Source: Pocillopora damicornis
Lineage: Eukaryota
Assembly (NCBI RefSeq): GCF_003704095.1
Contig: NW_020844479.1
Coordinates: 1-64,000 of the forward strand
Direction of reading: 5' to 3'
Length of the DNA: 64,000 nucleotides
A program made the position numbers and the translations under genes. Positions 1-16,500 of this stretch are shown in pieces. The stretch's first letter is position 1. Each line of letters starts with the position of its first letter. The notes under the pieces are model-generated. The model ran no database searches. It saw nothing but the letters and a program-made list of their open reading frames with translations, and was not told where the DNA came from.

Positions 1-107
1 AAGGCATTTTATGACTGGGCTACCACAGGTATCCCAGTAAATATTGGCGCCAGAAGCAGTTTTATGTTGCGAAGCTTGCGATTTTACATTGTGGTTCGAT
101 CGAATAC

Positions 108-423
108 TGTGGTGTAGAAGAGGATGAATCTTTGTAGAGTCATGACGAAATCACGTAAACCCTCTCGTGATATTACAGCAGAGAAGGAAGCTGGTGTAGT
201 GTGACCTTCAAGAATGATCTAGAAGTAGATGTGTCATGCTGAGTCATCCCTGAATGTATATATAAATAGAATCTATTGTAATGTTACGGAACGTTCTAGA
301 TCCTCAACCGTACCTATAAAAGCCGAGCATGTAACTAGATGTAGCGAGTAGTTTAGTTGCTGGTATAGCCCGTCAGATATCAATAAAGGTGTATGCTGCA
401 GAATACAAGACGTCCACACTTCA
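108..423 (+). mobile_element. LTR of an LTR retrotransposon (probably Gypsy-like 5' LTR), followed by a primer-binding site
   Basis: Runs TGTGGTGTAG...CCACACTTCA (TG..CA ends, imperfect inverted termini). Contains TATAAAA (~315) and AATAAA (~383). Followed after 2 nt by TGGTACCGTGA (426-436), close to the tRNA-His PBS TGGTGCCGTGAC. No gag/pol ORF or second LTR seen in the window. Confidence 0.62.
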
Positions 424-453
424 GCTGGTACCGTGAAATCTGGTTTTGCAGTC

Positions 454-558
454 GATAATAAGAAAAAGAAAGTGAGGAGAAAGGAAAGTCATTCACTGTA
501 CATCTAAAAAGTGTTGAAGAAAGTTCATCCAGATACTGGAATTACAACCAAATCCATT
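454..558 (+). pseudogene. Histone H2B fragment (end of N-tail, helix 1, loop 1) with an in-frame stop
   Basis: Translates [34 protein letters not shown], matching canonical H2B ...[27 protein letters not shown]. TAA at 505-507 replaces a Tyr. No similarity to the rest of H2B. Confidence 0.85.
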
Positions 559-8345: not shown

Positions 8346-9173
8346 ATGATTTGTCTACCAACACCAAGAATGGTTTCTGTTCGTAATGTTGTTATAATCG
8401 TGAAGCAAATCTTGGAAGAGTGGATTGTTCGGGAGTCTGGAATACTGTCCAAAACACAATGCGAAACCTTGCTACGTTCTGAAGAGACTATCACTACCTT
8501 ACCTACAAAAAGAGGAAATTACCCGAGATATCCCCTTTATGAGGACATTTCAAAAAAGTTACATCAGTGGCTGTCCACTGGGAATTTTCCTGTAAAAAGC
8601 GAAGCTTGTGGATTACTTTCGGAGGAAAATTTTGTTCAAGAAAGAAAAAGAGTTTATGAAAAAGTTTCGCTGGTACTGGCCTCCCTTAACGATTCTTGGA
8701 CAGAGATTTCTGATGAAGAAAAACATCTTCAGTTTTCTTCTATCATAAAAATTCTTGGCGTTAGAGGATTGCTTGATCTGCTTAATATTCGTCACACGCA
8801 AGGAAGTGTTGATATTTTTCCTCCTCCTGTTAAAGTTCTAATAGAATCCTTCAACGAGAAACACAAACCAAATGCCAATTTGACAGTTGGTGCAAGGGCC
8901 TTGTCTAAACACTGCCACAGGGATTCCAGTGAATGGTGGGGTGCCTGTGCGGGTAGTGAACAAGTTAAGAACGAACATGCTATTACAGTTGTAATGCGTA
9001 TACTAGAAGATGCTTCATGGATTAATATCCACCTACTGCCACATGAGCTCAAAGTTATTGAAGTGAGGTGCACTGAAGGTTACGGTGCAAGATGGAGTCA
9101 TGATGGAAAAGTTTTCCGTGGATTTCTTGAGCCTCAAATGGAGGATGGTCATGCAGCAGGATGGAAGCATTGA
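8346..9173 (+). CDS. Intronless 275-aa uncharacterised protein with a conserved C-terminal GARALSKH...GYGARW...GFLEP...GWKH domain
   Basis: Clean ATG-to-TGA ORF. The C-terminal ~100 aa resemble, from memory, the C-terminal domain of plant ASCH-domain proteins. No ASCH domain is evident here. Confidence 0.85.
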   Translation: MICLPTPRMVSVRNVVIIVKQILEEWIVRESGILSKTQCETLLRSEETITTLPTKRGNYPRYPLYEDISKKLHQWLSTGNFPVKSEACGLLSEENFVQERKRVYEKVSLVLASLNDSWTEISDEEKHLQFSSIIKILGVRGLLDLLNIRHTQGSVDIFPPPVKVLIESFNEKHKPNANLTVGARALSKHCHRDSSEWWGACAGSEQVKNEHAITVVMRILEDASWINIHLLPHELKVIEVRCTEGYGARWSHDGKVFRGFLEPQMEDGHAAGWKH

Positions 9174-9485: not shown

Positions 9486-9867
9486 GTTAGTGTTAAGGTT
9501 ACTGTAATATTTAGCAAGTTCTTAAGATAACTTACTTGTGAAAATCAATACTCTTCTGGTAAAGTTTTACCACATTATTTACTGATATCTGTCAACATAA
9601 ATGTTTATCATAAAAGTACAAATTGTTAGGAAATATACATATTTGGAAATGATCCAAAGAAGTAATAAACAGCAGTTTTCTATCGCATCAGCAGAATCCA
9701 TGCAAATGCATAGAACTGAACCTCTTTGGTAAAAGTCAATAATCTTCCGGAAGAGACACTTCAATCCAGTTATTTTGTTTATTAATAGACCGCTGGCTAC
9801 AAACGTGCCAGCGAAGGGGTTTTGAGAAACTCGTTCCCAGGCCGACAGAGGTTCTTGACCCATGTAA

Positions 9868-12791
9868 ATGATGGCGGTTCGAATATGTATATTTCTGATA
9901 TTTTTCTCTGACTATTTCTCGATTTACTGCCGCGTTTCAGCATACAAAATTGTAAAAGTTGCAAACTACAACATTTGGAATGTTATGTTCCAGTGGGAAA
10001 CAAGAAAATACTTCATTGCGGAAATGGTAATTTTTCACGTTTTTTGATATAATTTCATATCCGTCTCTTGACATTAACATTCAACCTTCACATATTTATG
10101 TGTTTCCCGCTGTTTTGTTTATTTTTTTTTGGTAAGGCTATTCTTATAATCCCAGCGAAAATAGTCATTTGAAAGGTTAGGTGACTATTTTTCTGGCTAC
10201 GTTCAATTTAAAAAAGAGAAACAAATCAAAAGAGAACTATTTTAATCGATTTTTATATTTAACAAATTTAATCAAATTTAACGTTGTTAAATTGACGAAA
10301 GTTTTCGAAATTCATAAATATTAGAGATTCTTGATGTTGAAAAATCAAAGATCGCGAGATTCTTGCTCTTTTTCAATCTTTATAAAATGTTTGTTGGTGT
10401 TAGTAGGTAGCTGAGCCCGGTCAAATCTACCTGTCAGTTAACCCGTGTCAATGCCCGTGTCCACATGTTGGGAAGGGTTGAAATTTGTTTTATATTGACA
10501 TCAACTTGAAAGCTTGTTTGGGTTGGTACTTTCACTCAAATAACCATGTTGGATTTGTTAGTTTTGTTTTCACATTGTGACATACTGCTATTCTGTCAAG
10601 GGCACTCAAGTTTGTATTTATTTTTATTTTTGTTTTATGGTTTGCAATTTATTATTCCAGATAAATAAAATTAACCCAGATGTGATTGGTTTCCAAGAAG
10701 TGAGGGCTGATACTAAGGATGAAAGAAACCAGTTAACCGAGCTTCAAGAGTTAATTCCACGGTACAAACACCTAGTTTATCACCCTGTTTCCGTGGTTAC
10801 ACACCCAGCTGGTCAACAAGGCCCACCAGGGTGGGAACAGGAAGGCCTGGGACTACTCAGTAAACATCCCATAATACTAAGTCATGTTGTGAACCTTACC
10901 ATCGGGAAAGGTGGTGTTGATCGCAACAAGAGAGCTATACTTCATGCCCAAGTTGATATTGATGGTGATGAACTGGATATAACAGTGCTTCATTTATCTT
11001 ACGATAAAGCTCAGCAATGCCAAAATGCAGTGGATGTCATTAACTATATTGCATCAATGGGAAGTGAACGCTCTGTTTTACTGGGTGACTTCAATGCATA
11101 CAATGATTTCCATTGGCCTGTAAATGGAATAATGAAAGGGTCCTTTGACAAGCAAGGCCCATGCCACGCATCCAGTCATTTGGATCCACAGGGATTAAAC
11201 CAAGGATATGGCTTTGTGGATGCCTGGGTGACAGCAAATGGGAACAGCAAGGGATATACCTTCAGCAATATGGTGTGTTGTAGAAAGGTTTTTCTGCCAT
11301 GCTCTTGTATAAATGATCTTATCCTTTTTTTTTAATAGCATTTAATAATGTATATGAAAAAAAACTTGCTTCTGATTGGCTGAATGCAAAGTTGTTACAC
11401 TAATGTAAATTACAAATAGCGCACCCTTGCTTTCAAAACTTTTGTCTGTCTTAACTTCCAGTGATGTTTTTCCATCTACATTATTAACAAGTAATATCAT
11501 GATTCCTGTTGCAATTTGGTGTAATGAGCACTTGAAAATTTTTCAGATTCCAAATTGCACTTGCCCTACAGGCTTGTGCAATTTTGTTGTCTTTGAAAAA
11601 GACTAGTGCTTATTAACACCAAATTTTATTCAAAATCATGTTATCACCTATACAAATTTCATCCCCTCTTTCAGTTGTGCTGCCAAAACAGACTGCTTAA
11701 TATGCAGATTGCTGACAGGATTTGGTTTGCTGCTTAGCCTCCTATGCTTGCTGTTAAGTTGAAAAACAAAAAGCCAATACCTTCTTTACCAACGTCACTT
11801 TGACTTGTGCCCTATCCATTCCAAGAGCATTTTGCAGAAAAATTTTCCATTGGTTTATTTTGTCTGAACATTATCTGACTTAACCTTTTAACTCCCAAGA
11901 TCTCATTAGTAATTCTCCTTACTGTCTGCCATACAGTTCTTGTGATATTAGTTTGGAGAATTTGGTATTGGATCAACTCATAATCCCCTAATTGATATTT
12001 TTTCTTAATTCTCATAACTTGTCTCCTTGATTTTGTGTTGATATTGTAAGGAGAAATTCTGTCTTGGTCATTCATGGGAGTTAAAGGGTCAACAGTATCA
12101 TGTTCTTTTGGTTTCTTAACACTGATCTCAAAGCTCTTGCTAAGGGCACAAGCTAAAGATAAGCTTATTTTCTTTCCAGCCAGAGCCCGGACTCATTAGT
12201 CGGCCAGACAGGATCCTTGTTTCTTTAACTGGACTTCAAGTTGTGTCTGCTGAGATTCACGGAGATGGAAAAATCTACCAACAAAAGTACAGCTTGCAGA
12301 ATAAATGGCAAAGGCTTAAGAAAGCATACCTCATGGCCAAAGAAACTGCTTATGGTCCACGTTTTAAATACACTTGTCATCAGGACTGTGGCCCTCATGG
12401 ATCATGTCGGTGTGGTGTTTGTGTTAAAGGAGGAGATACAAATAACTGCGAGTTGCCCTTCTGCTTTGAATGCAATGCCGAGCACTTAAACAATTTTATC
12501 TTAATTTTTGTGCTATATTCCACAACTTTGGTATTTTTCCTGTACATTCTCATAAAAATGTTGATACAAAGATGTTTTTCAAAGACGAGAAGAGTGCATG
12601 CCAGGGTCTTGTTTTTGTTGTCGAATAGAACACTAGGAATAGTTGTGGTTTGTTTAATGGCTGCTCTTTACTTCATCACAATGACTTTGCTACAAGACAC
12701 CTTGGAAACTGTTAATGGAAGGATTGCAGAAGAAATGTTTCCTTCAGATCATATGATGGTCACTGCAAGCTTGAAGTTTACATATAGATAG
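9868..12791 (+). CDS. EEP (endonuclease/exonuclease/phosphatase) superfamily protein, ~460 aa, with a probable signal peptide, a Cys-rich module and two TM helices
   Basis: Exons 9868-10026, 10661-11272, 12180-12791, joined by phase-0 GT-AG introns. EEP motifs appear in order: NYNIWN, DVIGFQEV, GLLSKHPI, VLHLSY, LLGDFNA, FVDAW, YTF, RPDRIL, FPSDH. Confidence 0.9.
11880..12092 (+). mobile_element. piggyBac-like MITE (~210 bp)
   Basis: TTAACCTTTTAACTCCCA...TGGGAGTTAAAGGGTCAA terminal inverted repeats with TTAA-type ends. One of many copies in the window. Confidence 0.75.
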
Positions 12792-13528
12792 CACAAACTG
12801 ATAATCAAAATAAGTAACCATGGTCCATGGTCTTCCCAACTGAATTTAAATAATGTATTCAAAGAAACAAGTGACCAATACTTAAAATTTTTTATTCTTG
12901 AGAAAAGAAATTTACTTACCNNNNNNNNNNNNNNNNNNNNNNNNNNNNNNNNNNNNNNNNNNNNNNNNNNNNNNNNNNNNNNNNNNNNNNNNNNNNTAAA
13001 CAATACTTCATGCCACAGAAATTTGCAAGGGAAGACTTCGAATCTCACTTTTCCTTGCCCCTTTATGAAATTTATACATAACATCCTTATTGGGGGCTTA
13101 AGTATGCCTTTGGACCCTTTGCCAACGTCTACAGAGATGATACGTGCACTAACAGAAGTCTATGAACATTCTATATATATAATTTACAGCCCTAAGAATG
13201 AAAGAGATTTAAAAAATAAGTGTTTAACAGCTTATCTGGGTTTTTCTGTGGTCTTCACTGAAGTTTTCTCTTCTTCATGATGAAGTTGCCTTTCTTCCCT
13301 GACCTTTTCAAGTCTGTTGCGTCACTCATTATGTATGCAATATAATTAAACGTCTTTCAATAACACTATTTATAAGAAATTTACATAAAGGTTCTTTACA
13401 TTCAAACATTACCACATTGAGGGTTAAAACATAGTTCTTGTGTAAAGCAAGTGTGAAAGAATAATAATAAATGTTCTTTTGTGTTTGCAGTTTGTTAGTA
13501 TTTTTGTTGATAATCCTTTCATCTATTA

Positions 13529-16500
13529 TCACTTTACAGCATTGTATTCCACAGACTTTGATGGATCTGCAGGAAACTTCTTTTGGCAAAAGGTCATCAG
13601 ACGTTTTAGTCCCTGAGAAAGAACAAAACTGGTTCACTGCAACATATTTACGACATTTTAAGACATAACTTATTGATTTCATTAGATAACTATTTTTTAT
13701 CATTATTTTCCATCTTAATCTTTACCTGAATGTACTTCCTTTGAGTTTCATCATTGAGAACATCTGATAAAACAAAAGTTAAGGGAACATAGCAATAAAT
13801 GGAAACTTGATGGGCTACATCATTTGGGTAGAAGTGACTGTTAACCCCTTCACCTCCAAGATCTTATGAGTAATTCTCCTCAATTTTTGCCTTACAATTT
13901 TTGTGGTGTCAGTTCGGAGAATTTGGTATTTGATCAACTTATGATCCCCTAGCTGATATTTTTCATTATTCCCATCAGTTGTCTACCTGATGTTGTACTG
14001 AAATTGTAAGGAGAAATTCTGTCTTGGCCCTCTATAGGAGTTGAAAGTTTAAGAGAATTGTGATCGTTGTACTTGAGCTTTAAAATTCAGTGGAAATCCT
14101 CCTGTAAATTAGCAAACATCAAACCAGTAAACAGGTAAAAGGGATACGAGCCACATTCTGAGCAAAAATTTTTTCTCTTCCTGTTCGTGCGTGAATTCCC
14201 ACCATAGTTACACCAATAGGCCAAGGTGCATTTCCTATTGCCATCTGAAGATATGAGTCATTGGCCTGTAGGATAAAATATAGTGATGCTTATCAAAATA
14301 AGCTTCCCTTTAAAATATCCTTCATTAGCAACAAAAATTTCTTATGAAAGTCCTACTAAAAGTTGTCTTAAATATCTTTTAACTCTTTCCACCCTAGCAT
14401 CAGTATGCATATTCTCCACTCTGCTCTCTATACATTTCCTGATGTGCTGACAAGGAGAATTTGTTTAACAATCAAGAGCTTCTTTAGTTGGTGATCATTT
14501 CCTCTTTTCTTGTAACTTTAATGTTTGATTCAAGGGTGATATTGTAAGGAGAAATTAAAGGCTATCACTCTCAGGGGTCCAAGGGTTGAATTGGAGTATA
14601 GTCTCTAGATGGAATTTTTTTTTTTGGAAACCAATCAAAACAATGAATAAAATCAATGAAAGATTAAAGTAAAATCAAAGTAACTAACATCATTGAATTG
14701 ACTTCATACCTTGACATACTCTCTTTCTAAAAGATTCATTATGATGGTTGTTAATGCACCAAGAATATCTTGAGGTGTTTTCTGTATGGAAACAACAAAC
14801 AAATCTGACATCAATAAGTGCAAGTGTCTGAGGTTTTTAGATGACATTTAATAAGTTCAACATCTTTTTTTTTTATAGCAGAAATTTCCACATAGAAAAA
14901 ATCTATGTCATTTTTTAATTTAAAGTTATCACTCTGATAATTATAGAACTCTTATTGTTGATGACTTTGAAAAGCCATGATAATTGTTAAAAAAGGACAG
15001 TTCTCCAAGTTTATTGTTTACCTTATTTTTAAGTTTTCTCAACAATGGCTTCAGATATGATTCTGTCTGTCTTTGAGTAGCACCTGCCAATTTTGCCTAT
15101 TTGCAAACAAAATAAATAAAGTAAAAAAACAAATAACTTGGTCAATATATTCAGCACCTAAACATGCTTTTGACACAGATAAACACAACTGGAAAGAATC
15201 CACTTGTGTTTAAAATACCAAAGGCTAGGAGGCAGACAAGTTGGCTATTTGCAAGCCACAGCACAGGGGTGACCTGAAGACTACACATGTGTGTTGACAC
15301 CTGGAGACTGCATGGGCTGATACTGATATTTGATTGTGACATATGATTGTCTGCATGAGGGTAGTCCAAAGAGGGACTGTTATCAGTTGTACTGACTAAT
15401 GCTTCAAAAACCTGAGTGGAAGTCACCATCATAGTCTAGTGAGGAGTTCTTGTCAATCAAGTTCACGTAAACTGCTAGTCAATCTTGCTGTGATGTTAAA
15501 ATCATACTGATCTGTTGTAAACATTCCATTTTGGTTCCAAAGGAAAAAAAGAGATGGATTCATGTATTGTAGATCTTCAGTTACTATTATAGTAATTTCA
15601 ATTTCTAATTCTGTAGTGAATCATGAAAAATGCTCTAGCTCTAGCTCAAGGTTTTTTTTTTTTTAACAATTTTAGTGTAGTGTGCTACCTCAAGGCTTCT
15701 TTTGCTATCATCAGATCTTGTCTTGCAATCCTTAGCCCATAAACCAAGGAGGAACTAAAGGGAAAGCAAAACAAACAGACATCTAATGACAAACAGAATC
15801 TATTTTGCTGTGGGTTTGTACAGTAATAGACACAGATGACGTCAAATTGTGTTAAGAGCATTAATGACATGCTCAGCTGTGGGTCATCTGCTGCATGCTT
15901 GTTTTTTTTTTTTTTTTTCATCAGTGCCTTTATCCAAATGACAATTTATACTTTAATACTGCATTATTAACAATTTTCTGTGAAAGTACAATCTGCAGTT
16001 CACCTGAATAAACTTTAAGATGACATCTTGATCCAAATTTTCATTACCTTTACCCATATTTATGGCCAGTTCCTTCAAAAAAAATAGAGAATATATTGTG
16101 CATATAGTTTAAAAAATACACAAAAATTAGCATTAAAAATATCTTTTTAATTGCAAAATATATTCAAAAGTAGAAAGCTAACCAAAGATAAATTTACCTT
16201 GATATCCTCCAAGGTTGTTCCATCTTCTTCAACTTGTGACGATTCTTCACTTTCTGAACTTTGTTGTTCACCACCACCCTACAAAAACATCCTTCTGATT
16301 AATTGCCTTATTCTCCTTACCATCTTCCACAAAAGTCTGTTTTGAGCCAAGTGCTCATCTAGTCACTGCTTATCCTGATTTCCTTAGCATCAAGTGACAA
16401 AACATTTTTACCCCCTCCTTCCCTAGATGAGATGCCAGTTCATCACAAAGTTACCCCTCCCAGCATTTCATCAGGCCTCCCTGACAATTCACCAGTACCC

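What the first reader, a model, noticed from the sequence alone, without database searches (positions are those of the whole stretch)
12180..12791. EEP enzyme with a Cys-rich module and a transmembrane hairpin inserted inside its catalytic domain
Known: in EEP-fold enzymes the R-x-D-x-I strand and the catalytic SDH motif are usually only a few tens of residues apart, and membrane anchors (e.g. nSMase1/Isc1) lie outside the domain. Seen: about 180 aa separate RPDRILV from FPSDHMMV. They contain an 8-Cys EGF-like stretch (CHQDCGPHGSCRCGVCVKGGDTNNCELPFCFEC), TM1 (FILIFVLYSTTLVFFLYILI), a basic loop (QRCFSKTRRVHAR) and TM2 (LGIVVVCLMAALYFITMTLL). The N-terminus looks like a signal peptide. Inference: a lumenal or ecto-phosphodiesterase whose catalytic His is delivered only after the chain crosses the membrane twice. 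That would pin the active site to the bilayer (lipid or GPI substrate) and could allow transmembrane control of activity.
Basis: partly seen in the sequence, partly recalled or inferred. Interest (0 to 1): 0.78.

Follow-up and report, generated by a model that had tools for sequence, protein, structure and literature searches.

The report
Membrane hairpin splits a phosphoesterase domain
A coral gene encodes a phosphoesterase whose catalytic fold is interrupted by a cysteine knot and two membrane-spanning helices before its last catalytic strand, and this odd, unstudied design proves to be transcribed and conserved from amoebae to sea urchins.

Summary
Window 12180-12791 (+) is the last of three exons (9868-10026, 10661-11272, 12180-12791) of a single-copy coral gene. 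RNA contigs from three studies show both GT..AG joints and no joint inside exon 3.

The 460-aa product has these parts in order:
- a signal peptide and an EEP body (PF03372);
- R265-P-D-R-I-L-V, then a 29-residue helix;
- an 8-Cys module, TM1, a basic loop and TM2;
- a short tether, S446-D447-H448 and the last beta-strand.

An AlphaFold2 model of a 98.5%-identical transcript ORF scores pLDDT 90 and pTM 0.87. It aligns end to end with solved EEP enzymes (Z about 26), so the SDH strand takes its canonical place.

More than 100 homologues share the split design. They come from cnidarians, echinoderms, hemichordates, molluscs, annelids, a brachiopod, a choanoflagellate and a foraminifer. Two amoebozoans have the hairpin without the Cys module. 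The inter-TM loop is net positive in 76 of 76 members.

All named members are "uncharacterized", and I found no paper on the family. The substrate and any regulatory role remain inference. "EGF-like" is not supported by any profile. Verdict: a real, ancient, undescribed variant of a known fold.

The parts
9868..10026 (+). Exon 1 (53 aa). It holds the start Met, a signal-peptide-like hydrophobic N-terminus (residues 1-25, possible cleavage VSA|YK) and the first EEP strand with the YNIWN motif.
   Evidence: ORF and sequence. Hydropathy. RNA joint 10026|10661 in 4 runs. It aligns with the signal peptides and the TYNLWNVMF motif of homologues. The same exon end (IAEM) occurs in Nematostella.
10027..10660 (+). 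Intron 1 (GT..AG, phase 0).
   Evidence: RNA contigs of X1, X6, X11 and X5 skip it.
10661..11272 (+). Exon 2 (204 aa), the main body of the EEP domain. Motifs: E66 (FQEV), H164 (VLHLSYD), D196/N198 (GDFN) and the invariant Cys pair C173/C221.
   Evidence: PF03372 E=1.8e-11 for this exon alone. Invariant columns in A2.
11273..12179 (+). Intron 2 (GT..AG, phase 0). It holds a very high-copy dispersed repeat at about 11840-12160.
   Evidence: RNA contigs of three studies skip it. Word depth reaches 4e4-2e5 over 11840-12160, with many loose ends.
12180..12791 (+). Exon 3 (203 aa plus stop). This is the finding itself.
   Evidence: The ORF is continuous. RNA contigs cover 12179-12900 without an internal joint. 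It occurs once in the genome.
12201..12221 (+). R265-P-D267-R-I-L-V strand. D267 is the Asp that pairs with the catalytic His in EEP enzymes.
   Evidence: R265, P266 and D267 are invariant in 66 sequences. The role of the Asp comes from established EEP knowledge (APE1 D283-H309).
12267..12353 (+). Long helix (residues 287-315) that leaves the EEP body.
   Evidence: AF2 DSSP gives H287-315 with pLDDT 92-98.
12375..12473 (+). 8-Cys module C323-C355 (C-x3-C-x5-C-x-C-x2-C-x8-C-x4-C-x2-C) with the core DCGPHGSCRCGVCV.
   Evidence: C, D, C, G, P, C, C, G, C and C are invariant or near-invariant. A beta-hairpin is predicted at 331-340. There is no Pfam EGF hit.
12495..12554 (+). TM1 (residues 363-382).
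   Evidence: Kyte-Doolittle peak 2.58. AF2 helix 357-390 with pLDDT 90-98. A first hydrophobic helix is found at this place in the homologues.
12555..12632 (+). Basic loop between the TM helices, inferred to be cytosolic.
   Evidence: Net charge +7 in P0116. The loop is positive in 76 of 76 members, median +6. Low pLDDT of 60.
12633..12692 (+). TM2 (residues 409-428).
   Evidence: Kyte-Doolittle peak 2.44. AF2 helix 406-427 with pLDDT 97-98.
12693..12743 (+). Acidic tether of 17 residues from TM2 to the SDH motif, containing the conserved EE.
   Evidence: E441 and E442 are near-invariant. The tether is short throughout the family (median 19, range 9-30, counted from the end of the hydrophobic window).
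12744..12779 (+). S446-D447-H448 catalytic motif and the final beta-strand (450-457) of the EEP sandwich.
   Evidence: S, D and H are near-invariant. DSSP gives strand 450-457. The structural alignments reach model residues 457-460 and the C-terminal ends of the solved EEP chains.

Best explanation
The locus encodes an expressed, single-copy, membrane-anchored hydrolase of the endonuclease/exonuclease/phosphatase (EEP) fold. Its catalytic domain is physically split.

1. A signal peptide takes the N-terminal 260-residue EEP body into the ER lumen, and from there possibly to the cell surface or another extracytosolic compartment (inferred).
2. After the strand that carries D267, the chain leaves the sandwich through a long helix.
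3. It then forms an 8-Cys disulfide module that sits on the membrane.
4. It crosses the bilayer (TM1), makes a basic cytosolic loop and crosses back (TM2).
5. After about 17 residues it supplies S446-D447-H448 and the last beta-strand. These complete the sheet and the Mg2+-dependent phosphoester-cleaving site (N/E66/H164/D196/N198/D267/D447/H448).

Because the tether from TM2 to the catalytic His is short and conserved, the active site should sit within about 2-3 nm of the membrane surface. The likeliest substrates are therefore membrane-bound phosphoesters, such as lipid head groups, GPI or glycan phosphates (inferred).

Shown here: the gene model, its transcription, the conservation of the design and of all catalytic residues, and the charge asymmetry. 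Predicted only: the docking of the SDH strand. Inferred only: topology, location and substrate.
For: Gene model and expression:
- Both splice joints are seen, and there is no joint inside exon 3, in RNA contigs of three studies.
- The transcript ORF P0116 (460 aa) is colinear with the exons and differs at 7 residues.

Fold and catalytic residues:
- PF03372 scores 56.5 bits against a cutoff of 24.5.
- The catalytic motifs are invariant or near-invariant in 66 sequences.
- The AF2 model has pLDDT 90.1 and pTM 0.87. TM1, TM2, the Cys module and the final strand are all above pLDDT 86.
- VIA-align spans model 25..460 against full EEP chains: Z 25.9 (3mpr), 25.8 (4ruw), 25.7 (TDP2) and 24.7 (human nSMase1, 8j2f).

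Conservation of the design:
- Almost every homologue that carries both motifs has two hydrophobic helices and the DCGP motif between RPDR and SDH. The gap is 145-241 aa.
- The exceptions are divergent or mis-modelled members with gaps of 93-106 aa.
- The design is conserved across Cnidaria, Ambulacraria, Lophotrochozoa, a choanoflagellate, a foraminifer and, for the hairpin only, Amoebozoa.

Topology:
- The loop is positive in 76 of 76 members, the flanks are acidic and the tether is short.
- Ten conserved Cys on the proposed outside include the invariant pair C173/C221.

Other:
- Only synonymous variants fall in the catalytic and Cys parts among coral transcripts, while the TM and loop region varies.
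- The Nematostella genome encodes the same contiguous last exon.
Against: - No experiment supports this, and no dedicated topology or signal-peptide predictor was available. Hydropathy and charge rules were used instead.
- I could not read the model's coordinates. The His-Asp geometry and the orientation of the active site to the membrane are therefore not measured.
- The loop just before RPDR (residues 251-260) has pLDDT 53.
- The closest solved relatives are bacterial EEPs of unknown function, a mannose-6-phosphatase (4c1r, 25% identity) and TDP2. None is a lipid enzyme, so the fold gives no substrate.
- Amoebozoan members have short hairpins (16+19 residues with a 4-residue turn) that might not span the bilayer.
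Confidence: 0.72

Rival explanations
1. The architecture and topology are the same, but the hairpin is only an anchor. The substrate is soluble or extracellular, for example nucleic acid, nucleotide or phosphoglycan. The protein would then be an ecto-nuclease or ecto-phosphatase.
For: The best sequence and structure matches are non-lipid EEPs: 3teb and 4ruw (E 2e-9 and 4e-8), and the mannose-6-phosphatase 4c1r and TDP2. There are weak NCBIfam hits to the membrane nuclease MnuA and to ExeM/NucH.
Against: Those hits are far below the family cutoffs. A plain anchor could sit at either terminus, as in nSMase1, yet the internal position and the short TM2-to-SDH tether are kept across eukaryotic supergroups. 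That argues the geometry itself is under selection.
Confidence: 0.25
2. The two hydrophobic helices do not cross the bilayer. They form a monotopic or re-entrant hairpin, or a buried protein core, so the whole chain stays on one side.
For: Amoebozoan relatives have a 16-residue first helix and a 4-residue turn. AlphaFold cannot tell a membrane from a hydrophobic core.
Against: In the coral both segments have 20 or more apolar residues, with Kyte-Doolittle peaks above 2.4. The loop carries +7 here and is positive in 76 of 76 members. In bilaterians the loop is 40-66 residues long with its own conserved CCLxNP motif. This is hard to fit inside a membrane or a protein core.
Confidence: 0.1
3. The topology is inverted. 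The N-terminal hydrophobic stretch is not a signal, the EEP body is cytosolic and the loop is lumenal.
For: The coral N-terminus is only moderately hydrophobic over 19 residues (1.81).
Against: There are ten conserved Cys in the body and module. Most full-length homologues have typical signal peptides. The charge bias is the reverse of what this topology needs.
Confidence: 0.03
4. The stretch is an annotation or assembly artefact, or a decaying gene. The Cys/TM block would be intronic or non-functional sequence.
For: Older gene models (Nematostella P0023, Elysia P0154) lack the hairpin.
Against: RNA contigs include the block. The frame is open with no indels. The block is conserved across phyla. 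The Nematostella omission is a false intron, because its genomic ORF encodes the hairpin contiguously.
Confidence: 0.01

Closest known systems
Bacterial EEP proteins of the structural-genomics group (PDB 3mpr, 3g6s, 3l1w, 4ruw, 3teb) and the Bacteroides mannose-6-phosphatase BT3783 (4c1r)
   Same: These are the best sequence and fold matches: profile E 2e-9 to 9e-6, Z 24-26 and 23-25% identity. They share the same N-terminal YN..W..R...I....PD(V/I)IGxQE layout and the same catalytic residues.
   Different: Their domains are contiguous and soluble. SDH follows the RxD strand within a few tens of residues, and they have no Cys module and no TM helices.
Neutral sphingomyelinase 1 (SMPD2, PDB 8j2f), yeast Isc1 and bacterial sphingomyelinase C (2ddr)
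   Same: They have the EEP fold (Z 24.7 and 21.1). nSMase1 is also held to the membrane by two TM helices and acts on a lipid head group (established knowledge).
   Different: In nSMase1 the complete domain (chain residues 5-284) comes before the TM helices. Here the helices lie inside the domain, before the catalytic His. Sequence similarity is weak (E 6e-5). There is no Cys module, and nSMase1 is not a signal-peptide protein.
PGAP2IP/CWH43 C-terminal nuclease-like domain (PF23226)
   Same: It is an EEP-like domain of a multi-pass membrane protein of the secretory pathway that acts on GPI lipid (established knowledge). There are weak Pfam matches in 7 of 66 members.
   Different: The window protein scores 14.5 bits against a cutoff of 27. 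In PGAP2IP the TM helices are N-terminal to the domain.
TDP2, CCR4/CNOT6L, nocturnin and PDE12
   Same: They share the fold and the catalytic motif set (Z 23-26).
   Different: They are cytosolic or nuclear enzymes acting on nucleic acids or NADP(H). They have no membrane parts and only 16-22% identity.

Membership tests
EEP superfamily (Pfam PF03372) | Profile match above Pfam's gathering score | tested here: met
   56.5 bits against 24.5 for P0116. All 66 of 66 family members match. Exon 2 alone scores 44.7 bits.
EEP superfamily (Pfam PF03372) | Catalytic residue set: Asn in strand 1, Glu (QEV), GDxN, Asp of the RxD strand, and SDH | tested here: met
   E66, H164, D196, N198, D267, S446, D447 and H448 are invariant or at least 90% conserved. 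They align with the same motifs of 3teb and 4ruw.
EEP superfamily (Pfam PF03372) | Four-layer alpha/beta sandwich with the His-bearing strand at the C-terminal end | tested here: met
   This is a predicted model only. pLDDT is 90.1. Z is 25.9 over 244 residues, and the model range 25..460 covers whole chains.
EEP superfamily (Pfam PF03372) | Metal-dependent phosphoester hydrolysis | not testable with these tools
   This needs an enzyme assay.
Neutral sphingomyelinase (nSMase1/Isc1 type) | TM anchors placed after a complete catalytic domain | tested here: not met
   Both TM helices lie between D267 and H448. In 8j2f the domain is residues 5-284, ahead of the anchors.
Neutral sphingomyelinase (nSMase1/Isc1 type) | Closer in sequence to sphingomyelinases than to other EEP groups | tested here: not met
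   Profile E is 6e-5 to 2ddr, against 2e-9 to 3teb and 4e-8 to 4ruw.
EGF-like domain | Match to an EGF-type profile | tested here: not met
   There is no EGF family at E<=1 for exon 3 or at E<=0.01 in 66 members.
EGF-like domain | Small disulfide-knotted fold with a central beta-hairpin | tested here: inconclusive
   A hairpin at 331-334/337-340 is predicted with pLDDT above 90 in the full model. The module folded alone reaches only pLDDT 60, so no fold search was run on it. The Cys spacing CxCxxC differs from the canonical EGF spacing.
PGAP2IP C-terminal nuclease-like domain (PF23226) | Profile match above the gathering score | tested here: not met
   14.5 bits against a cutoff of 27. Only 7 of 66 members reach E<=0.01.

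The most novel reading that the evidence does not exclude
The split is a switch and not only an anchor. The cytosolic loop is basic everywhere, and in bilaterians it is 40-66 residues long with a conserved CCLxNP motif that could be palmitoylated. The loop could set the packing of the TM hairpin and so seat or unseat the SDH strand. That would give inside-out control of an extracytosolic phosphodiesterase. The enzyme could act on the sphingophospho(no)lipids typical of the animals that keep it. One candidate is ceramide aminoethylphosphonate, a major lipid of cnidarians and molluscs but not of crustaceans (PMC8708635).
Probability: 0.08. Interest if true: 0.85.

Novelty: new variant of a known kind. 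Interest (0 to 1): 0.64.

Why it matters
Soluble catalytic folds are almost never interrupted by membrane-spanning helices. Here the final catalytic strand must be exported again after two membrane crossings before the enzyme can work.

The design has been kept since before animals, amoebozoans and foraminifera diverged. It is absent from the hits for vertebrates, arthropods and nematodes. That makes this a conserved membrane enzyme family with no known function and no model-organism history.

It offers a natural test case for three questions:
- how a split domain folds across a bilayer;
- how an active site can be held at a fixed height above a membrane;
- possibly, how a cytosolic loop can control an outside enzyme.

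The family is also tractable in Nematostella and in sea urchins.

Tried and rejected
Exons were searched one by one by reference. The database ORF P0116 (7 differences in 460 aa) stood in for the whole protein.
- ESM Atlas search with exon 3 gave no usable hit.
- A PDB sequence search with exon 2 alone gave nothing meaningful. The family profile was needed.
- NCBIfam gave only sub-threshold hits: MnuA, ExeM/NucH and Xth.
- A search of the window's own genome found no paralogue of exon 2 or exon 3.
- The Cys module folded alone was a poor model (pLDDT 60), so I ran no fold search on it and make no fold claim.
- Three paper searches found nothing about this family or design: by architecture, by six locus names, and by EEP plus TM hairpin. 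One search was a malformed query.
- I considered that TM-less forms (Nematostella P0023, Elysia P0154) are real soluble isoforms. This is rejected for Nematostella, where the genomic ORF encodes the hairpin contiguously. Elysia was not checked.
- I considered that the block is spliced out in the coral. This is rejected.
- Model coordinates could not be read, so I report no distances or membrane orientation.
Full report
**Gene model.** The finding's stretch, 12180-12791 (+), is the last exon of a three-exon gene. Reading the sequence gives:
- exon 1, 9868-10026 (53 aa);
- exon 2, 10661-11272 (204 aa);
- exon 3, 12180-12791 (203 aa plus stop).

All borders are GT..AG and phase 0.

I laid Logan contigs of four RNA runs on 9700-12900. 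The joint 10026|10661 appears in all four runs. The joint 11272|12180 appears in three runs, each from a different study (X1, X6, X11). In those three runs a single contig carries exon 2, the joint and 12179-12900 without any further joint. Two of these contigs (X6, X11) also carry exon 1. The mRNA therefore contains the Cys/TM block.

No indel or stop was seen. The only other joints lie in a very high-copy repeat inside intron 2.

The runs are labelled coral or marine metagenome, so the organism is a stony coral. The gene is single-copy in its 234-Mb assembly.

**Joined model.** A word search with a related coral ORF (P0014) returned P0116. This is a 460-aa ORF from a transcript assembly. It is colinear with the three exons and differs at 7 residues. 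I used it as the stand-in for the whole protein.

**The observation.**
- R265-P-D-R-I-L-V lies 181 residues before S446-D447-H448.
- Between them are eight Cys in 33 residues (C323-C355).
- Two segments of 20 apolar residues follow (363-382 and 409-428). Their Kyte-Doolittle peaks are 2.58 and 2.44.
- A basic loop separates the two segments.

Exon 2 alone matches Pfam PF03372 at E=1.8e-11. In P0116 the Pfam match covers residues 37-286 and profile positions 3-216 of 225. It stops just where the insertion begins, with only the SDH end of the model missing. This confirms that the two motifs are normally adjacent.

**Does the SDH strand dock?** I ran AlphaFold2 on P0116 with a 66-sequence family alignment (A2). 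The model has mean pLDDT 90.1 and pTM 0.87. Its elements after the RPDR strand are:
- strands 267-272 and 276-284;
- a long helix, 287-315;
- a small hairpin, 331-334/337-340, inside the Cys module;
- helices 357-390 and 406-427/429-436;
- short turns, then a final strand, 450-457.

All of these have pLDDT above 86. The exceptions are the inter-TM loop (60) and the loop 251-260 (53).

VIA-align of the model against Foldseek's top chains spans model residues about 25 to 457-460. It reaches the very ends of complete EEP chains:

| Chain | Protein | Z | rmsd (Å) | Aligned residues |
|---|---|---|---|---|
| 3mpr_D | Bacteroides EEP protein | 25.9 | 3.3 | 244 |
| 4ruw | Beutenbergia EEP protein | 25.8 | 3.4 | 249 |
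| 5inm_B | mouse TDP2 | 25.7 | 2.5 | 227 |
| 8j2f_A | human nSMase1 | 24.7 | 3.0 | 245 |

In the model, the C-terminal strand therefore occupies the canonical last-strand position. I could not read coordinates, so I report no His-Asp distance.

**Conservation.** An exhaustive HMMER search with exon 3 alone found 80 proteins, 54 of them at E<=1e-10. The word search with P0014 found 101.

Nearly all members that carry both motifs have:
- a gap of 145-241 residues between RPDR and SDH;
- two hydrophobic helices;
- the DCGP core of the Cys module.

The few exceptions have gaps of 93-106 residues and are covered below.

Named members come from the following taxa:
- Cnidaria: Montipora, Hydractinia, Nematostella and the jellyfish Sanderia.
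- Sea stars, sea urchins, a crinoid and a brittle star.
- Acorn worms.
- Many molluscs.
- Annelids: Capitella and Owenia.
- The brachiopod Lingula.
- The choanoflagellate Salpingoeca urceolata.
- The foraminifer Bolivina argentea.

Two amoebozoans (Phalansterium, Soliformovum) keep the helix, a tight hydrophobic hairpin and EExFPSDH but lack the Cys module. The hairpin may therefore be older than the module. Alternatively, the module was lost in those lineages.

No vertebrate, arthropod, nematode or fungal protein appeared among the hits. This is an observation on two hit lists, not a proof of absence. All named members are "uncharacterized", "hypothetical" or plain "EEP domain-containing".

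**The TM-less Nematostella model.** P0023 jumps from the Cys module straight to TFETVN...SDH. I fetched its locus. The genomic ORF L003:4162-4884 encodes the hairpin contiguously. It aligns with the whole of exon 3 at 51% identity, E=6e-69. The old model therefore contains a false intron. Exon 1 of Nematostella also ends at the same IAEM, so intron position is conserved between sea anemone and coral.

**Topology (inferred).**
- Ten Cys are conserved in the body and module. C173 and C221 are invariant. This fits an oxidising, extracytosolic location.
- Typical signal peptides head most full-length members.
- In 76 of 76 full-length members the inter-TM loop is net positive (median +6, coral +7). 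The outer flanks are neutral or acidic (medians -1 and -2).
- The distance from the end of TM2 to SDH is short and conserved (median 19, range 9-30).

The positive-inside rule thus gives body out, loop in, tail out. This is the only arrangement that lets the tail rejoin the body.

The bilaterian loops are longer (40-66 residues) and carry a conserved CCLxNP motif. The coral loop is short.

**Selection.** I compared variant positions between the coral RNA contigs and the window.
- The long helix, the Cys module and the SDH codon carry only synonymous changes.
- Residues 356-400 (TM1 and the loop) carry 9 amino-acid changes and 3 synonymous ones. Several of the amino-acid changes are conservative.

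This is what one expects of a helix constrained mainly for hydrophobicity.

**What it resembles.**
- By sequence profile, the nearest solved proteins are bacterial EEPs of unknown function: 3teb at 2e-9, 4ruw at 4e-8 and 3g6s at 9e-6. Sphingomyelinases follow at 6e-5.
- By fold, the same bacterial group, the mannose-6-phosphatase BT3783 and TDP2 lead.
- nSMase1 is the nearest analogue in lifestyle, as an EEP with two TM helices. Its helices follow a complete domain, so the defining feature differs.
- No EGF profile matches the Cys module. Folded alone, the module is not confident. "EGF-like" remains a resemblance of Cys spacing only.

**Mechanism.** The catalytic set is intact, so the protein is most likely an active Mg2+-dependent phosphoesterase. 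The short, conserved tether from TM2 to His448 should hold the active site close to the outer or lumenal membrane face. So should the Cys module, which ends 7 residues before TM1. That points to a membrane-bound phosphoester as substrate.

This last step is inference, and the fold relatives do not favour any substrate. A regulatory role for the cytosolic loop is possible but untested.

The family is kept in phyla rich in ceramide aminoethylphosphonate and is missing from crustacean-type lipidomes (PMC8708635). This is a loose correlation that I offer only as a lead.

**Verdict.** The design is not a quirk of one gene. It is the hallmark of an old, unstudied eukaryotic enzyme family. I found no description of it in the searchable literature.

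Noticed in passing
window 8346-9173 (+) and L003:1892-2746 (-): The intronless 275-aa gene just upstream of the EEP gene has a 50%-identical orthologue (E 5e-93) directly next to the EEP orthologue in Nematostella. There it lies on the opposite strand. This is conserved microsynteny with a local inversion. The gene's function was not examined.
   Followed up: partly
window 11840-12160 (intron 2); a similar ORF fragment at 13815-13937 (-): This is a very high-copy dispersed repeat. RNA contig word depth is 4e4-2e5, against about 30-50 for the exons. There are many loose ends and odd internal joints, so it is transcribed as part of many other RNAs.
   Followed up: no
window 12922-12997: A run of N lies inside the 3'UTR. 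RNA contigs continue more than 1.2 kb beyond 12900, so the UTR is long. The gap was left untouched.
   Followed up: no
window 9997-10548 and 11305-11411: Low-depth RNA contigs cover parts of intron 1 (X1) and the start of intron 2 (X5). This may be intron retention or DNA carry-over. Read-through of intron 2 would end the protein about 24 residues after exon 2, without RPDR or SDH. That is similar to the 290-292-aa "isoform X2" models of Asterias and Ptychodera.
   Followed up: no
alignment A1, inter-TM loop of the bilaterian members: Bilaterian orthologues carry a conserved CCL(F/C)NPxL motif and an RR-rich stretch in a 40-66-residue cytosolic loop. Cnidarian loops are only about 18-28 residues long and lack the motif.
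   Followed up: partly
window 12201 upstream loop, residues 251-264 (11255-11272 and 12180-12200): The motif TFSNMPxPGxxS straddles the exon 2/3 joint. It is almost invariant across the family yet has the lowest confidence in the model (pLDDT 53). It is a candidate substrate-binding lid.
   Followed up: no
P0096 (700 aa, Logan): One homologue carries a thioredoxin domain (PF00085) in front of the split EEP architecture.
   Followed up: no
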